NCBI GenBank assembly: GCA_965603825.1
Contig: CBFDEM010000045.1
Coordinates: forward strand, 434,001-498,000
DNA length: 64,000 bases
Origin: Blepharisma stoltei ATCC 30299
Taxonomy: Eukaryota > Protista > Ciliophora
Direction of reading: 5' to 3'
Made by a program: the position numbers and the translations under genes. Below are positions 15,405-34,167 of the stretch, piece by piece; position 1 is the first letter of the stretch; every line of letters begins with the position of its first letter. Under the pieces are notes generated by a model. The model searched no databases. It was given only the letters and a program-made list of their open reading frames with translations, and was not told the DNA's origin.

Positions 15405-15947
15405 TTAACCCTTTTTAAGGATTCGGTTCCATGCTGCTTTTGACCATTCTTCTTCACTAATTTCAACGCAGATGGTATCTTTGCTTTTGGGGATTTCTTT
15501 TTCTATTCAATTTTCTTGGCTGTTTTTTGGTAATTTATTCTCGATTTCTTCAATTCTTGTTTGAATATTTTTATCTCTTATCGTAATCCCTTCTTGTATC
15601 ATTTCTAATAACGCAGTCAGGTTTTTTCCATCTCTTTGTTTTAATCCTTCTATTTTTACTGTTAATTCATTCACTTGGGCTTTCATTCATTCTTCCAGGG
15701 TTGACATTTTATTTAAGCATTCATTTAATTCAATATCTTTTTGCTTTACAACTTTGCGAAGAGCCTGATTTTGGCCTAAAAGTTGTTGGTATTTTGCCTT
15801 TTTTTCTAAATCTTTATTATATGAATCAGAATTTCGAGCTCTTTTTATTGGAAGTTTTGATGTGTTAGCTCTAGGCTTTTTTTCTTTAGAATTGATCGTG
15901 CTATTTGATGTGCTTTCTTGCGCAGGAAGAAGTTTGGTTGCTGACAT
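15405..15947 (-). CDS. Hypothetical coiled-coil protein (~180 aa)
   Basis: ORF 15687-15947 continues through two TGA to TAA at 15405; heptad-rich. Confidence 0.65.
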
Positions 15948-16290
15948 ACGAATCGATTTTTTATTTGTTTAGGAAAATTAAAATTAATTGAATTTGAAAT
16001 ATATATTGCCCCCAAAATTTAGAAAAATTTTAATTTATGTATTTTTGCAAATAAAATTCTGATCTGCAACAGCAGTAATCTAAAATAAAATCTTTTAAGA
16101 AAATACCTTTTTTTTGCATAGGTTACATTAATTATTTATTAGCTTTAATATATATTAAGCTTGTCATCAAAATTTATTTTAAAAAATAAAAGCAGCTAAT
16201 TTAATATTGAAATCATCTTGTCCAAGCATTTTGATTATCATTCACGAAGATGGAAAGTAAACAACCGCAAAGCAATTTAATTATTATTTA

Positions 16291-20834: not shown

Positions 20835-20920
20835 TCTTCATTCATGCAAAATTTAATCATTATTGTTTGATAAATAATACAATTTATATAAATTTACTTA
20901 TTTCATATTAGTTTCAATTA

Positions 20921-21261
20921 ATGGCTGATTAAGAGAAACAGAACTGCTATTGGAAGTTTCTATTATTGGAAACGCTGCTTGTGGAAAATCATATCTTATG
21001 CTAAAATTCAGAGACAATATTTTTGAAAATAACTATATAACTACGATTGGAGTGAATATTAGAAATATAGATCATATGAAAATGCAGTAAGCCTGAGCAA
21101 AATCTGATTTAGAAAGCCAGAGAGTAGTTACTTATGATGAAGTAAAAGAGCTTGCAGAGATAAACAAAGCATACTATATAGAGGTATCAATGGTAACAGG
21201 AGATAATGTCCAAAATGCTTTTAAATTAATTACAAGCAAAATAGTCTCAAGCTTGAGTTAA
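20921..21261 (+). pseudogene. Rab-family small GTPase pseudogene
   Basis: IIGNAACGKSYLM..F..NYITTIGV, KSDLESQRVVTYDE, YIEVSMVTGDNVQNAF. ATG 20921 is out of frame, there is an internal TAA, the WDTAGQE region is absent and there is no C-terminal Cys. Confidence 0.8.
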
Positions 21262-21561
21262 TTATTATTCTTTAAAACTTTTTCCATATCTGAGTGAATT
21301 TTCTTCAGTTTTTTGAAAATACTGATATGATAATTCTAAGCTAAAATGTAATAAATAGTTAGTTTTAATGATTAATGGCCTATCTATTAATATTTGGCAT
21401 TTATCAAATCTCGCTTAAATCTTTTGATATCTGCTAAGTTTATTGAAAGAAAACTCTAATTTATATTTTTAAAATTTATCCAGCCCATAATAAAATTTTT
21501 ATTATTTCAAATTTTATTGAGGGGGACCTTTTAATCATTTTTTTTATCCATATAATAAAAT

Positions 21562-22782
21562 ATGAACGAAGATCTCAGTTTCTGTCCATTTCATAGACCA
21601 TTAGAAGACACTTGCGGAGGCTGCTTAGCCTTTATCAGCTCAGCCCGCAAAATAAAAGAAGAAGGAGACAAACTCAACAAAGACGTCGACCATCTCAAAA
21701 AACTAAAAAAGATCCTTAAAGTAAAGTTAGCAAACCTTGAAGGAACCTTATACAACCTAACCAAGCATACCCTAATTCAAGAAGGCCAGCTTCCAAACTC
21801 CTACGTCAAAAAGCACGCTCTCAATGAGTATTTATTAAAACTGCCTCTTCCTTCAAATTTTTTCGCAATTCTCAAAGACAAAGAACTTTCTATGAGCTTT
21901 TTGCTGCAGGTCGGGGCTATAGAAAGCAGAAGATCTTGCCATTGTGGAAGAGATATGGCATTAATACTCAGAGATAGAGAAGAAAAATACGAATTCGAGT
22001 GCTACTGTGGGGCGTCTGAAAGTCTTATAGAAAGAACTATCTGGGAGCCAGCCCATCTGACACAAGAAAATATTTTACTTTACATTTTCTTATGGGCAAT
22101 GAACATGAGGGATAAAGAAATCATCCATTTATTAGGGATTTCTTCATATGACGCCAAATACTGTGATATCACATTGAGAAAAATCATATCAAACTATTAC
22201 ATAAAAAACCTCCCCAAGTTCAAAGGAATCGTAGAAATTGATGAGTCTTGCTTCAGAAGCAGCAATAGCAGTACAAGCCGAAACGTCAAATTTGGCCAAA
22301 ATTCACCAGAAAAATGGGTGTTTGGACTATATGAGAGAGAGTCAAAAAGAGTTTATATGGAAGTCGTCCCAAAAAGAACTGCCCAGCATTTAATCCCAAT
22401 TATCCAAAAACGCTGTGAAGTCGGAACTACAATAATTTCAGATCAGTGGGCTGCATATAATAAACTTCCTGAGTACGGTTTTCCTCATTTTACTGTAGAC
22501 CACTCAAGGTTTTTTGTGAACCCTCACAATAGAGAAATCCATACCCAGCATATCGAAATTTCTTGGTGTTGGGCGAAATATGATATCAAGCGCCATCATA
22601 GACATCTTAATAATATGCAGGATTATCTCAATGTTTTTTGCTGGAAAAGACAGTTCAAGAATAGCCATAAATTAAGCGAAGTTGGAGACACAATGAAAGC
22701 ACTATTTGAAGTACTCAGTGAATATCAAAAAGAAGGGAAGATTATGGAGAAGAAGATTGCTGAAGCGTTGCTTGTAGAGTAA
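21562..22782 (+). CDS. Merlin/IS1595 (ISXO2-like) DDE transposase-derived protein, apparently domesticated
   Basis: GIVEIDES, KWVFGLYER, VVPKRTAQHLIPII, GTTIISDQWAAY, HFTVDHSRFFV, HTQHIEISW. N-terminal Cys/His cluster, coiled coil and a CHC..CYC zinc ribbon. The next gene's stop is 7 nt away, so there is no room for a right TIR. Confidence 0.9.
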   Translation: MNEDLSFCPFHRPLEDTCGGCLAFISSARKIKEEGDKLNKDVDHLKKLKKILKVKLANLEGTLYNLTKHTLIQEGQLPNSYVKKHALNEYLLKLPLPSNFFAILKDKELSMSFLLQVGAIESRRSCHCGRDMALILRDREEKYEFECYCGASESLIERTIWEPAHLTQENILLYIFLWAMNMRDKEIIHLLGISSYDAKYCDITLRKIISNYYIKNLPKFKGIVEIDESCFRSSNSSTSRNVKFGQNSPEKWVFGLYERESKRVYMEVVPKRTAQHLIPIIQKRCEVGTTIISDQWAAYNKLPEYGFPHFTVDHSRFFVNPHNREIHTQHIEISWCWAKYDIKRHHRHLNNMQDYLNVFCWKRQFKNSHKLSEVGDTMKALFEVLSEYQKEGKIMEKKIAEALLVE

Positions 22783-22789
22783 TTAATAA

Positions 22790-24370
22790 TTATAACTCAA
22801 TTTCTTCTTGTTGTGAGAGAGGCTGGTAGAAGTATTTTTTAGCGGCAATGTATAGTAATCCAGATATTATGCCGATAATCAAAATGACTAAGTATAATGC
22901 ATTCCATTGAAAACTTCCTTCAAATTTCTTATCTTTATCTGCAGGTCCTGTTGAATTTAAGTCAGATTTCAATGCAGAAGAGAAAAAAAAAGAGCTTTCA
23001 TCAATACTGTAATTTTTATTCGAGACTTTATAATGCTGTTTTGTCCTTGAATTTACTATATGGGACTGAGGAGGGACATTTGGGTCAGGTTTATTCTGTT
23101 TCAGCCAATTCGAATCAACTTTTGCTGAAATCACTACAATCACATCTTCTTCTGTTATTATTTCTTCTGAAAACTCAGTCATACCTCCCCATCTGCATTT
23201 CCCACCTCTATTTTTTGTTTTTTTTAATAGACTGATTGATTTGCTTGAATCTTTTATGATTTCTTCATATAAAGTCTCAGTATATTTCCCATAAAATACC
23301 TGTGTATAATCAACTGTTATGCATCCCCAAACTGTCCAGTCTACTCTTATCCCATTTTCAATTGTTACAATATCAGCTAAAATGTATGGTTTTGCAAGGT
23401 CGATTAGCCCAAGTGACATTCTAATAAACTGTGGGATTAGTCCACCTTGTTCTGAGGACAATACTTGGCTTTTATGTCCATATCTTTCTGTATCAGGTGA
23501 TTTGTCATTATCTGCTTCTACAAGAAACATTAATTGTTTCAGTCCTTCTGGGTTTGAATTTGAAAATTCACTGCAATTTGTGATTGGTTTTTCAGGATTT
23601 ACTGAGTTTTCCCAACCTCCTGCATAAGCCCAGTCTTCCATTCCACCAGTCACATCATAAACTTTATCAGTCATCGGGCCAACGCCTAAGTCAGCCTGAG
23701 AAAATTCTAAAATGGCTTTGGCAATTGAGTCGGCTGCTGCATGGTCTGGGGCTTCTGTAGATTTTTCATCCTTTTTATGATCAGGAGCTCCCCAAGGATA
23801 TGAAATAGAAGCATCTCCTCCATGAAAAGTGATGCTTGTCCTTATCAAGTATTTTTCGAATATTTTTTCAACTGTTTTAGCTGTTATTGTTTTGAAGCAT
23901 TCTCCTTTGATCATATATGCGAAATCTCTGTTTGTGTCATATAATCTCCCTCCCACTGATTCTTCACGCTGGTTACGATAATATCCTTGAGCATTTGTCA
24001 TTGGAGTCATAATTATAAGGCGGGTGTCGACTAGTCTTTTTATTCATGAATTTGTGTCATAATTTGAACATAAAAATTCAGCGAGCTCTGCTAACACGAC
24101 TGGGCCTAAGCGCTCATTTCCATGAAGGCAGCCTGAAAAATAGATTTGAGGAACTGAACCATTTGAGTTTGAAATTGTAAGAATTGGGGTTAAACACTCA
24201 TGGCAGTCTTCAGGCGATGGCAAGTTAAAATCTGTTTGAGAAGATGACAGTCTTAGAAATGGGCAAGTAGCATTGAGATGCAATAGACGGGACATTATTT
24301 CTGTGTAGTTCAGTGGTGAGTAGCTGTAAACTGCAGAAAAGCTGGCAAAAATAAGAAATCATGCCATCAT
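22790..24370 (-). CDS. M14 zinc carboxypeptidase with signal peptide and C-terminal TM anchor (~526 aa)
   Basis: HGNE, PMTNAQG, DTNRDF, TFHGG, YDVTGGMEDWAY. Joined through two TGA; ATG at 24370. Confidence 0.88.
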
Positions 24371-24483
24371 CTTTAAAGTATTTACTTGTTTCCTATAGCT
24401 TAAATTGTGAAAATGGTCGATTAAATGCTAATAAAGCTTAAAAAAGATTAAATTGTTTTAAAAAGAATTAAAAATAAATTATA

Positions 24484-26295
24484 TTATATTTTCATAAAAA
24501 TTTCGTTTTTTGGCTTTTCTATTTCAGGCGGCATTGATTTTATCATTTGGAAAATTTCTGCGTCAGACTTATTCCAATTTTGTGGAAGTAGCCATCTTCT
24601 CGAAGTATTTGTAACAATAAATGGCAACAAATCTCCTTTTATCTTTTTACAAGTAAACAAAAGATGACAGCAAGGTATCTTGTATTTAATTGTTTTATTG
24701 CAATTGCAGCTTGCAGCATTCACATCAATTTCAAATTCTTCTTTACAAAAATGTCTGTCATCTTCAACATATATAAAATTTTCTCCTAATTCAGATTTTA
24801 TTTCACAATTTTCCATGCCATTTAAAGATCTCAAAATCTTTTGTATGCAAAAATCAGTGTACAAATTCTGCAGCCCATTAATTCCTTTGAGTCCCAGCAC
24901 TACTTCAGGTTTCTCGAAATTGGAAATTTTTGTATTATTACTCGTCTGCATATCTTCGAATTCTTTGAAAATGTTAAATTTTGCTTCTTTTTTGAGCAAA
25001 GAATTGATAGCTTTTAACAGGACTTCTACGTTTCGGATCCTGCGTTTTGAGTGAAGCCCTGCTAAAAAATAGTTGCAAGTCCAGTATTTCGTCCATTTTT
25101 TTCTTTTTATCATCAAATTTTCTAATTCGTTATTTCTTGCTGTGACTGGGATTTCGTCAACCATTTCACTAAATTTTTTAATAATTTCTGGCTCAGATTC
25201 AGCTTTATAAATTCCAATCATTTTTTCTCTTATAATAGTCCAATCATTGCTAAATATCCCATGAAGCCTTTCTAAGACATGTAAAACACTGAAAAGTATT
25301 TTAGTCTGCGGGAAGCATTTCTTTAAACAATTATATAAAACAGGCTCTGAGTCCATAACGATAATTTCTGGGTCTACAAGTCCTAGTTTTTTAAACTTCT
25401 TGAACGCTCATGAATAGCTTAACTCATTTCCAATCCTGGCTAGTGTCAAAGCAATCAAATTATTGTTTCCTCATGAATCTACAGTGACCATAAGTATGGT
25501 GAAATTAAAATATGAGTAAATATTATAAGAAGTACTGATAAACATAATATCTTTCATATTATTCCATATATATATTTTTTCGGTCGTTGTCGCGAAAAAT
25601 CGTTCTGTTTTTGGCTCACTTTCTATAATAGTGTCAGGCGTTTTTATGTGATTTTTGATAATGTCTTCATAAGTCATTGCCATTTTCTTTTTTTGGCACT
25701 CGTATTTTACGAAGTCTTTTATTTTTCTGTAATTAAACATAATATCTGGATGCTTTTCTACGATTTTTTCATAAATTCTTTTTGGAGTGAAGCCTTCTTG
25801 ATAAAGAGTCAATGCATAAACTTTTATATCGTTAGACAGACATACACTTCTAGGTATTTCTTGAAGATTTGAGGTGGTGAGCCTAGGGTGGTTATGGTTC
25901 GGGACCATTTTTCTGCAATAATACTCTAAATAATTTTCATTTTTATTTCTCGGGACTCAGTTCATAGTAAATGGACAAAGAGACGATGGAGCGAGGTGAG
26001 GGAATTTTTCGTTTTTGTGAGGAACTGAAAAATAGCAGACTCAGTCAAAGCGGTTTTTGTGGGAGCGGATTATCCTGGCGATTGTGTTGTCTTCTTTAGC
26101 ACATGTTGATGCTATAGCGAACTTTAGATCTGGAAGGTTTTTACAAGTTATGACAGAGCCAACGTAAAAGCACTCGGTAACATAGCCGCTTTGCTGATCT
26201 GAGGCAATTTCTTCATCATAAAAGCCCTTTCTTTTTTTATCATAGCGGCAATGTTTTTGCAGGAGTTTAAACGGATTTGCGAAATGCTTGCTCAT
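24484..26295 (-). CDS. MULE-transposase-derived FAR1-like protein with SWIM finger, copy 1 (603 aa)
   Basis: One frame with 4 TGA(Trp). N-terminal C..CPF..HNH DNA-binding-type motif; MULE core (SYS(W)AF..PEIIVMD..FPQTKILFSVLH); SWIM CNC..IPCCH. Confidence 0.82.
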
Positions 26296-26306
26296 GATTT
26301 TATATT

Positions 26307-26320
26307 ATCCCCCTTTTTAA
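26307..26320 (-). promoter_or_regulatory. Upstream motif TTAAAAAGGGGGAT, 11 nt before the ATG of MULE copy 1
   Basis: An identical 14-mer occurs upstream of MULE copy 2. Regulatory function is inferred. Confidence 0.5.
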
Positions 26321-26330
26321 AATTAATAAA

Positions 26331-28142
26331 TTATTTAAATTTAATTGCAATTCCTAAGAGCTCTTTATCTGTTTTACCATCATGTTCAGGCAAAAGCCAC
26401 CTTTTCGCTGTATGCTCAATAATAAATTCCACAATATTCTTGTTTTTACGCCTACACATAAACAGTAAGTGAGAGCAAGGGATTCCATGCTTAATCATTC
26501 TTTTACAAGTGCATAGTCTATATTCCCAATGGATTTCAAACAATTTTGACACCCTTCAGCTTCTATCATCAACTATTATGATTTCATCATCTAAATTCGT
26601 CCTAGGAAAAATTTGTCATAAACATTTAAGGGCAACGTAAACCCTCAGCAAGCAATATTGAGTATAAAGTTTTTCAATCCCTTTCACATTAGCTGCTACA
26701 TCTTCAAGAGCTCCAATTTTCTTGACACTTATATGTTTTACGCTGCTAGTTTCTTCGTCAGCCTTACATAGATTTTCATATTGAGAAAACATTTTTAGCT
26801 TTCCTTCTCGCTCAATTACTTTGTTTATTTCTTTTTTGATGGTAAACATGGATTTAGACCTTTTTCTTGTTAATAATCCAGCTGTAAAAAAATTTCAGAC
26901 TGAGTATTTTGCCCACTGGTCTCTGTAGTTAAAAAAGTCAAGATATTCTTCACAGTTTTGGAGTGACGGGTATTCACTAAGGAGATTGTTTCAGACTGTA
27001 AGAAGATCTTCTTCAGTTTCTGCACGAAACACATTGATAAGTTTATAAGTGATAAATGGGCCTTTTCTGCCGATGCCAAGATTACAAGAGTGCGCATAAT
27101 GCTGGAGGCTGAATAAAATGGTGGAGTTTGGGAAATTTTCCTTCATAGAATCATATTGTGTTTTTATAGAGTCAGTTATTATGGTTTGAGGCTCAGTAAA
27201 TCCTTGATTTTTAAATAAATTGAAAGTCCAGTCATAGTTTTCTTCATTGTCTTCTTTAAGCAGCGCAATTGCAATTATCGAATTAATGCCATTTCTGTCA
27301 ACAGTCAACATTAGCATTGATGCTTTAAAAAATGGATGCAGCTTCCCATTGGTCTCTATAAGCAAAATGTCTTTTAATGAGTTTCACAAAGCCAGTTTTT
27401 CTTTAGTTGTGATAAAAATTCTTTGCTTTTTGGGGTTATTTATAAGAATAATTCCATCTTCAGCGATATTTCTTTTGACAATGTCATCATAATTCATACG
27501 GGATTTCCAAAGTCCTGTGCGACTAGATAGGCATGATCTAAGGACTTTGGAAGACATTTTAAGGCTTGGATAGCTTTGTTGAATTGCGTTAAAAATTTCA
27601 CTGCGGCTGAAGCCTTGTTGGTAGAATTGGCCAATTTCTTCTTTCACAAATTCAGGGAGAACAGTATGGGATTCAAATGATTTACAGTCGTTGTCATTAG
27701 GCCTAGGATGGTTGTGGTAAGGATTTATTGAGCGGCAATAAAATTCATATTGGCCATCTTCACGTTTCCTTCCATTTCACACCATTTTAAATGGACATAA
27801 GCTTTCAGGGGTAATTGAAGGAAATTTATCATATTTTCTGGTAATTGAAAAATAGCACACAAATCGGCAGGAACGCCCATTAAAATGTTTTTTAGTCCGA
27901 ATTATGGAGTTTTCTTGGCGGTCGCAAACAGATATCACTTGAGTTATTAATTGTTCACGGTTTTGACAGACTATTATTGAGCCTTTTGCAAAGCATGTGA
28001 TGTTATAAAAGGTTTCTGCAATTTCAATTTCTTTATATTCTTTTACAGGCGCCTCTTCGTCATCGTCTATATCTTCAACTAATTCTATTTTTATTTTCTT
28101 GGAAGGCTTTTTTCCTGCGTTTGATTTGCTTTTCTTAAGCAT
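26331..28142 (-). CDS. MULE-transposase-derived FAR1-like protein with SWIM finger, copy 2 (603 aa)
   Basis: One frame with 6 TGA(Trp) from ATG 28142. FVCYFS..CPF..HNHP; IALLKEDNEENYDWTF..PQTIITD..FPNSTILFSLQH; SWIM CTC..GIPCSH. Confidence 0.82.
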
Positions 28143-28162
28143 ATAATTTATTTTAATAGACA

Positions 28163-28176
28163 ATCCCCCTTTTTAA
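28163..28176 (-). promoter_or_regulatory. Upstream motif TTAAAAAGGGGGAT, 20 nt before the ATG of MULE copy 2
   Basis: Identical to 26307-26320 despite strong divergence of the two coding regions. Confidence 0.5.
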
Positions 28177-33771: not shown

Positions 33772-34167
33772 CTATGGATTATTTTGGAAAAGTTTTTCTG
33801 CATCCCAGAGTGATCCAGATATTAGCTTGTGCTTCAGATCTTCTTCATTGTGAACTATTACAGGAACTTTTTCATGCCTCTTCATGCGGTGCTTGATTGC
33901 TTTGTGAGAATTAAGATTTCCAGCCTGTGTAAAAGATTTCGTGCATCCAGGATAAGGACATTTATATGGCTTTTCACCTGTATGAACTCTTATATGCGTC
34001 TTTAAATTAAAATCAACTGAAAACGATTTTTCACAGTAAGGACAGTGGAAAGGCCTTTCTCCGGTATGGACAAGCTGGTGTCTTCGCAATTTTGAGTTGT
34101 CTTTGAATGCCCTCTTGCAGATTTTGCATTGGTAGTTCCTGATACTCATATCGTAGCTGTCTGACAT
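33772..34167 (-). CDS. YY1-like C2H2 zinc-finger protein (three fingers)
   Basis: [54 protein letters not shown] closely parallels YY1 fingers 2-4. Confidence 0.85.

What the first reader, a model, noticed from the sequence alone, without database searches (positions are those of the whole stretch)
21562..28176. Cluster of three domesticated transposase genes (one Merlin, two MULE) in a somatic ciliate chromosome
Seen: within 6.6 kb lie an IS1595/Merlin DDE gene and two MULE/FAR1-SWIM genes, separated only by a carboxypeptidase. All have intact frames, sit tightly against host genes and show no visible TIRs or TSDs. All three have a G5 purine tract just upstream of the ATG. Established: ciliates remove transposons from the macronucleus and use domesticated transposases (PiggyMac/Tpb) for programmed DNA elimination. 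Inference: this may be a co-regulated, non-PiggyBac module pairing one catalytic enzyme with catalytically dead DNA-binding partners, analogous to Pgm plus Pgm-like proteins.
Basis: partly seen in the sequence, partly recalled or inferred. Interest (0 to 1): 0.8.

Follow-up and report, generated by a model that had tools for sequence, protein, structure and literature searches.

The report
Shared developmental promoter box in Blepharisma
These three tamed transposon genes of the ciliate Blepharisma are already published as switching on while the new somatic nucleus is built; what is new is a short run of G bases just before them that also marks many other genome-rebuilding genes and is kept in Stentor, probably a shared on-switch.

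Summary
The window is Blepharisma stoltei somatic DNA (UGA=Trp). The three genes are real and match published genes MAC18052 (Merlin), MAC18054 and MAC18055 (MULE) by contig, order, CDS length and domain. Singh et al. 2023 already list them as TIR-less and 100-196x induced in new-MAC development. Merlin keeps D227/D294/E332, as do 46/46 close homologs, including four in Stentor. Both MULEs lack the first Asp, the CxxH Cys and the catalytic Glu, against a published count; their nearest kin are germline-limited Mutator transposons with long TIRs and 9-bp TSDs. The cluster looks incidental: no MULE near six Merlin homologs elsewhere, and Merlin and MULE are unrelated folds. The G5 tract is the real lead. 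A GGGGG(A/C)(T/C) box in either orientation lies within 80 nt of the ATG in 13/17 intact somatic transposase genes, including the PiggyBac excisase candidate BPgm, against 1/44 neighbours. It also precedes induced PCNA, Rad21, ligase, TFIIS-N and HMG genes and is conserved before Stentor Merlins (4/4 vs 0/33). Best reading: a heterotrich developmental promoter element, analogous to but unlike the Paramecium Co-PGM motif; function untested. The scan noted the G-tract only on this stretch.

The parts
21520..21527 (+). G5 box (AGGGGGAC), 36 nt before the Merlin ATG; putative developmental promoter element
   Evidence: same box before paralogs L002, L003 and Stentor homologs
21562..22782 (+). Domesticated Merlin/IS1595 transposase, 406 aa: N-terminal Cys/His motif and long helix, Cys4 zinc ribbon (C126, C128, C147, C149), DDE core D227/D294/E332 intact; = BSTOLATCC_MAC18052 (Contig_5.g527)
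   Evidence: Pfam; alignments; model pLDDT 81.6; identity by contig, 1221-bp CDS and domain, 100x induced
22790..24370 (-). M14 zinc carboxypeptidase with N-terminal signal-like and C-terminal membrane-like segments; bystander, no G5 box
   Evidence: Pfam; MAC18053 absent from the stored >6.3x part of Data S3
24484..26295 (-). MULE_A, 603 aa, catalytically dead Mutator-derived protein (S254 for D1, D315 kept, CxxH Cys lost, R421 for E), N-terminal C-C-HxH and C-terminal SWIM zinc ligands kept; = MAC18054 (Contig_5.g529)
   Evidence: 196x induced
26307..26314 (-). G5 box (AGGGGGAT), 13 nt before the MULE_A ATG, inside the 35-nt spacer after MULE_B
26331..28142 (-). MULE_B, 603 aa, catalytically dead (E263 for D1, D324 kept, CxxH Cys lost, K430 for E); 31% identical to MULE_A, 44% to an unlinked paralog on C35; = MAC18055 (Contig_5.g530)
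   Evidence: 145x induced
28163..28170 (-). G5 box (AGGGGGAT), 22 nt before the MULE_B ATG

Best explanation
These are three independently domesticated transposase genes of the Blepharisma somatic genome that belong to a genome-wide programme switched on while the new macronucleus is built. Each has its own copy of a G5 box (core GGGGG-A/C-T/C in AT-rich DNA, either orientation, about 7-70 nt before the ATG), most likely the binding site of a development-specific transcription activator. The same box precedes BPgm, one BPgm-like gene, DDE_3 genes, PCNA, Rad21, a DNA ligase, a TFIIS-N protein and an HMG protein. Their adjacency comes from an old MULE duplication plus a Merlin paralog that lies two genes away, not from a conserved module. 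Merlin most likely still cuts DNA in the developing MAC, on a substrate class other than the TA-bounded IESs assigned to BPgm (about 0.4 for cutting DNA during rearrangement). The MULEs, which came from Mutator transposons still present in the germline, most likely act as non-catalytic zinc-dependent DNA-binding or chromatin factors. Shown: identity, frames, residues, motif position and conservation, germline relatives, published induction. Inferred: that the box drives transcription, that a protein binds it, and every protein function.
For: Box within 80 nt of ATG in 13/17 intact somatic transposase genes vs 1/44 other window ORF starts, Fisher p=5e-9. Strict pattern 97 hits genome-wide vs 43 for the reversed control; 12 of the first 30 hits lie 7-53 nt from the ATG of a long ORF, and at least 5 of these 12 match genes in the top 2.4% of induction: Rad21 191x, PCNA 116x, TFIIS-N 76x, ligase 56x, PCNA 21x (hand binomial about 6e-6). 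HMG gene Contig_50.g122 (81x) also has it. Both orientations occur (BPgm, L032, L034 carry C5; divergent pairs share a box; counts 225 vs 72 and 162 vs 57). Conserved before Merlin in S. coeruleus (3/3, one with four copies) and another Stentor-like contig vs 0/33 neighbours, and before Merlin and DDE_3 in a second UGA=Trp species. RNA-like contigs stop inside the CDS and do not reach the MULE boxes (weak). Merlin: triad in 46/46 homologs, 6/7 strain differences synonymous, dN 0.32-0.38 with dS 1.6 to saturated. MULE: fold matches IS256-family ISCth4, catalytic residues lost, germline relatives with TIRs and 9-bp TSDs.
Against: No reporter, binding or knockdown data. The box is not required for induction: Merlin C53 (51x) and DDE_3 L033 lack it within 200 nt, as do homologs L076 and L085. 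An AlkD-like gene next to a box was not found in the >6.3x table. Gene matches rest on contig, length and domain, not on coordinates, and the Rad21 length was cut by the locus end. The reversed-pattern control is imperfect. Transcription starts are unknown, so a 5' UTR location is not excluded for the boxes closest to the ATG. Absence of MULE orthologs in Stentor rests on searches that also missed a known Blepharisma paralog.
Confidence: 0.7

Rival explanations
1. First reader's module: the cluster is a selected unit in which catalytic Merlin works in a complex with the two dead MULEs, like Pgm with Pgm-likes.
For: All three are co-induced (r=0.90-0.97); a Merlin within two genes of a MULE locus has a rough chance of 0.004; collinear and unbroken in a second strain 3.3% diverged.
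Against: The chance for any two of about 25 transposase loci is about 0.05. No MULE or carboxypeptidase homolog within 5-10 kb of six Merlin homologs. Two other intact Merlins and two other full-length MULEs are unlinked yet carry the same box and are induced. Different superfamilies. The true ortholog of this Merlin paralog in another Blepharisma species was not seen, so genus-level linkage is untested.
Confidence: 0.1
2. The dead MULEs are FHY3/FAR1-like transcription factors, possibly the proteins that read the G5 box and sustain the programme.
For: Catalysis lost while C87, C107, H134, H136 and the SWIM ligands are invariant in three paralogs; plant FHY3/FAR1 are MULE-derived activators (own knowledge); all four full-length MULEs carry the box.
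Against: The box is conserved in Stentor, where no close MULE ortholog was found; the MULEs rise with, not before, the other box genes; germline MULE ends read GGGT, not G5. Induced C2H2 finger genes (ranks 9, 20, 49) are equally plausible readers.
Confidence: 0.12
3. The G run acts at RNA level (5' UTR element for translation or stability), or is a DNA-rearrangement signal like the Tetrahymena A5G5 tract read by Lia3.
For: Several boxes are only 7-14 nt from the ATG; both MULE boxes read exactly A5G5; development-specific eIF4E genes are induced.
Against: Either orientation occurs and distances reach 70 nt; the A5 flank is not conserved genome-wide; the association is with mRNA induction and gene starts; DNA contigs of two runs span both MULE boxes without a break.
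Confidence: 0.08

Closest known systems
Blepharisma stoltei domesticated IS1595 and MULE genes (Singh et al. 2023, PMC9942806; bioRxiv 10.1101/2021.12.14.471607; Seah et al. 2023, PMC9942856)
   Same: These very genes: MAC18052 and MAC18054 are named in the preprint text, MAC18055 in Table S6; TIR-less, induced, role undetermined.
   Different: The preprint's main text has no occurrence of 'promoter' and I found no remark on linkage. Seah SI counts 5 of 6 MAC MULE triads intact; my alignment finds the four full-length ones lack D1 and E. The papers saw IS1595 domains among other ciliates only in Oxytricha and Stylonychia; S. coeruleus has four homologs.
Paramecium Co-PGM promoter motif (Bazin-Gelis et al. 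2023, PMC10711438)
   Same: Short orientation-independent element upstream of the PiggyBac excisase and co-expressed rearrangement genes, conserved between species.
   Different: That motif is an 18-bp AT-rich sequence 50-60 bp before the TSS and was proven by reporter mutation; this one is a G5 core in a different ciliate class and is untested.
Tetrahymena A5G5 tract and Lia3 (PMC4780704)
   Same: Both MULE boxes read A5G5.
   Different: That tract sets IES boundaries; here the box tracks gene starts and the A5 part is not conserved.
Pgm plus Pgm-like complex of Paramecium
   Same: Co-induced catalytic and dead transposase-derived proteins.
   Different: Pgm-likes are paralogs of Pgm; Merlin and MULE are unrelated, and no complex is shown.
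Plant FHY3/FAR1 and MUSTANG domesticated MULEs (own knowledge)
   Same: MULE core plus SWIM finger, no TIRs, host-fixed.
   Different: No Pfam FAR1 hit; independent origin from ciliate germline Mutator elements; function unknown.

Membership tests
Merlin/IS1595 transposase | DDE_Tnp_IS1595 domain | tested here: met
   PF12762 72 bits vs cut-off 27
Merlin/IS1595 transposase | DDE triad | tested here: met
   D227, D294, E332; kept in 46/46 homologs
Merlin transposon (mobile element) | TIRs, TSD and near-identical copies | tested here: not met
   No TIR; paralogs only 35-61% identical
Mutator/MULE transposase | MULE domain and IS256-like fold | tested here: met
   PF10551 29.3 and 35.6 bits vs 27.6; best structure ISCth4, E 1e-7
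Mutator/MULE transposase | DDE triad and CxxH motif | tested here: not met
   S254/E263 at D1, Ser for Cys, R421/K430 at E; germline and outgroup copies keep D, C, E. MULE_A has an E one turn later (E424) in a low-confidence stretch
Mutator transposon (mobile element) | Long TIRs and 9-bp TSD | tested here: not met
   Absent in the window; present in germline relatives L081-L083
FHY3/FAR1-type factor | N-terminal FAR1/WRKY-like zinc DNA-binding domain | tested here: inconclusive
   No PF03101 hit; C87, C107, H134, H136 invariant; model pLDDT under 50 there
Pgm/PgmL-type excision complex | Dead partners are paralogs of the catalytic subunit | tested here: not met
   No Merlin-MULE similarity; different structural matches
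Pgm/PgmL-type excision complex | Co-induction during new-MAC development | tested here: met
   Published RPKM, correlations
Pgm/PgmL-type excision complex | Physical complex needed for IES excision | not testable with these tools
   Needs co-IP and knockdown
Co-PGM-type promoter element | Upstream of excisase and co-expressed genes, either orientation, conserved between species | tested here: met
Co-PGM-type promoter element | The Paramecium 18-bp AT-rich consensus | tested here: not met
   G5 core vs the published consensus
Co-PGM-type promoter element | Required for transcription in a reporter | not testable with these tools
   Needs transformation
Tetrahymena A5G5 boundary element | Fixed distance outside an IES end | tested here: inconclusive
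   Contigs of X7 and X12 span both MULE boxes unbroken, but their germline content is unknown; A5 not conserved

The most novel reading that the evidence does not exclude
The G5 box is the master cis-element of the heterotrich genome-rearrangement programme, older than the Blepharisma-Stentor split and acquired repeatedly by newly domesticated transposases of four superfamilies. The heterotrich-wide, catalytically intact Merlin it controls (peak RPKM about 7 times BPgm) is a second, non-PiggyBac developmental nuclease for non-TA IESs or chromosome fragmentation.
Probability: 0.25. Interest if true: 0.8.

Novelty: new variant of a known kind. Interest (0 to 1): 0.55.

Why it matters
The genes are known, but what turns on DNA elimination in heterotrichs and what the extra domesticated transposases do are stated open questions. 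A five-base box that can be scanned for gives a candidate list of the rearrangement programme, including genes with no Pfam domain that the published tables omit, and extends it to Stentor, where mating cannot be studied in the reference strain. It also gives bait to find the activator. The residue analysis narrows the nuclease candidates to three intact Merlin paralogs and removes the four full-length MULEs.

Tried and rejected
Bacterial-code ORFs split the genes; table 4 restores them. Active transposon or germline DNA: rejected (MAC assembly, no TIRs, diverged paralogs, strain collinearity). L081-L083 came from looking up unnamed MULE hits and turned out to be B. stoltei. Word search with the MULE alignment returned only the query; the exhaustive search found only B. 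stoltei full-length relatives, germline relics and distant FAR1-like proteins. Proteins with UGA were searched as pieces or via database ids; three calls failed on stops. The careful Merlin tree did not finish; the quick tree was used. The figure 2.4e-10 printed ignores unmatched genes and is not used. Literature searches for a G-run promoter motif in ciliates found only Lia3/Lia5 and the Paramecium motif. Bogo and BstTc1 TIRs have poly-C runs but different flanks, so no origin of the box from them is claimed. Read laying gave contigs only and showed 40 of about 208 differences, so MULE dN/dS and box conservation between strains were not read.
Full report
Source and identity. Reading UGA as Trp opens long frames across the window. 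The own genome has 41,464,486 bases in 64 contigs and the window lies on C45, which is Contig_5 in lexicographic order. This fits the Blepharisma stoltei ATCC 30299 macronuclear assembly (41 Mb, UGA=Trp). The published table lists Contig_5.g527 (MAC18052, 1221 bp, IS1595), g529 (MAC18054, 1812 bp, MULE) and g530 (MAC18055, 1812 bp, MULE). These lengths, domains and the skipped number for the carboxypeptidase match the four window ORFs exactly. All three rank in the top 60 of about 14,800 Pfam-annotated genes for induction at 26 h (100x, 196x, 145x). The authors state that such genes lack TIRs and that their roles are undetermined.

Merlin. The 406-aa protein has an N-terminal Cys/His motif and long helix, four invariant cysteines of a zinc ribbon, and an integrase-like core. 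D227, D294 and E332 are intact here, in two unlinked paralogs and in all 46 close homologs, while the two distant paralogs on C2 and C53 are dead, in line with the published three of five. Homologs at 39-59% identity occur in S. coeruleus (four genes) and many metagenome contigs, embedded among host genes. The quick tree groups the three intact B. stoltei paralogs together (support 84) beside a Stentor-containing clade. Synonymous divergence far exceeds non-synonymous, and 6 of 7 visible strain differences are silent. This is an old, heterotrich-wide host gene that has kept its active site.

MULEs. Both reach the Pfam MULE cut-off and MULE_A's model best matches the IS256-family transposase ISCth4. 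Against relatives, the first Asp is Ser (A) or Glu (B), the CxxH Cys is Ser, and the catalytic Glu is Arg or Lys; the two other full-length somatic MULEs show the same losses. This disagrees with the published count of five intact of six. Putative zinc ligands at both ends are invariant. MULE_B is closer to an unlinked paralog (44%) than to MULE_A (31%), so the pair is old. The nearest non-somatic relatives are three broken elements in assembly GCA_914767885.1, which I take from memory to be the MAC+IES assembly. They have TIRs of about 330-700 bp at 95-99% identity, GGGT ends and perfect 9-bp target duplications; the TIR of one is absent from the MAC genome while its flank matches at 100%. 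They keep the catalytic residues that can be read. So the somatic genes are dead descendants of a Mutator family still present in the germline.

Is the cluster a module? The carboxypeptidase has no box and is not in the stored induced list. A rough chance for a Merlin within two genes of a MULE locus is 0.004, and about 0.05 for any two transposase loci. No window gene other than Merlin matches the flanks of four homologous loci, and called genes around two more show no MULE. The order is kept in a second strain with 150 differences in 4485 bases and no frameshift, which is too close to be informative. The ortholog of this exact paralog in another Blepharisma species was not found. Linkage is thus unexplained but weakly supported as functional.

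The G5 box. Only 8 G5/C5 runs occur in the 64 kb; 4 lie within 80 nt before an ORF start, and three of those are the transposases. Across the genome the run precedes 3/5 Merlins, 4/4 full-length MULEs, 2/2 unbroken PiggyBac genes including BPgm, and 4/6 DDE_3 genes; two more have G4. That is 13/17 against 1/44 (p=5e-9). An unbiased strict pattern gave 97 hits against 43 for its reverse. Twelve of the first 30 sit 7-53 nt from the ATG of a long ORF, two more next to ATGs with interrupted frames. Five of the twelve match strongly induced genes: Rad21, two PCNAs, a TFIIS-N protein and a DNA ligase. Others encode a RING-PHD protein, a zinc finger and orphans whose expression I could not look up. 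The box occurs in both orientations and between divergent genes. It stands before all three S. coeruleus Merlins checked, once as four copies and once as a C6/G7 pair, and before one in another Stentor-like contig, but before none of 33 neighbouring genes. It is also kept before Merlin and DDE_3 in a second UGA=Trp species. Box genes share a late-rising profile with BPgm and differ from the early-peaking Piwi. Exceptions exist: an induced Merlin (C53), one DDE_3, and homologs in L076 and L085 lack it.

Mechanism. Most likely a development-specific activator binds the box on double-stranded DNA and turns on a programme of DNA-cutting, repair, replication and chromatin genes; the excess counts suggest a few hundred members (rough). 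Newly domesticated transposases of four superfamilies have come under it. Within the programme Merlin is a plausible second nuclease and the MULEs are plausible non-catalytic DNA-binding factors. All of this functional reading is inference.

Comparison and verdict. The closest precedent is the Paramecium Co-PGM motif, orientation-independent and proven by reporter, but of unrelated AT-rich sequence. The Tetrahymena A5G5 tract matches the two MULE boxes by sequence only. I found no paper reporting the G5 box. Earlier scan notes on this same stretch saw the 14-mer, the dead MULEs and the intact Merlin; I read them after reaching these points. The cluster as posed is largely known; the box is a new variant of a known kind of element and directly testable. 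Interest 0.55.

Noticed in passing
L081:8595-11506, L082:8899-11250, L083:7352-11248 (GCA_914767885.1): Germline-limited Mutator transposons with 330-700 bp TIRs, GGGT ends and perfect 9-bp TSDs, two of them inside host genes; I found no description of their TIRs or TSDs in the germline paper.
   Followed up: partly
window 22838-22847: In DNA run X7 two contigs break here, in the carboxypeptidase 3' end, each continuing into foreign letters, with a 10-base overlap containing TA: an insertion or IES with a long direct repeat and no visible TIR.
   Followed up: no
window 15405-15947 (-), C5 run at 16009-16013: Orphan 180-aa coiled-coil-like ORF with a G5 box about 60 nt upstream; predicted to be development-induced.
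   Followed up: no
window 33772-34167 (-): 396-bp two-finger C2H2 gene resembling YY1 fingers, same length as the rank-9 induced gene Contig_7.g1394; no G5 box. This family is a candidate reader of the box.
   Followed up: no
window about 20920-21260 (+): Interrupted Rab-like GTPase sequence just upstream of Merlin, apparently missing part of the core; possible pseudogene.
   Followed up: partly
L006 (C48) and L007 (C12): Two 99%-identical MULE copies in the MAC assembly with D1, D2 and CxxH intact but truncated or frameshifted, no G5 box, 50-66% identical to germline element L083; recent relics rather than domesticated genes.
   Followed up: partly
L081:1785 (-) upstream: An EF-2 paralog has a C5 box about 70 nt before its ATG; may be a development-specific translation factor.
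   Followed up: no
L079:9860-10000: S. coeruleus SteCoe_15225 has four spaced copies of the box within 140 nt, useful for defining the consensus.
   Followed up: partly
L075 and L078: Merlin lies directly downstream of an SBDS gene in two Stentor-like genomes: conserved synteny that supports old domestication.
   Followed up: partly
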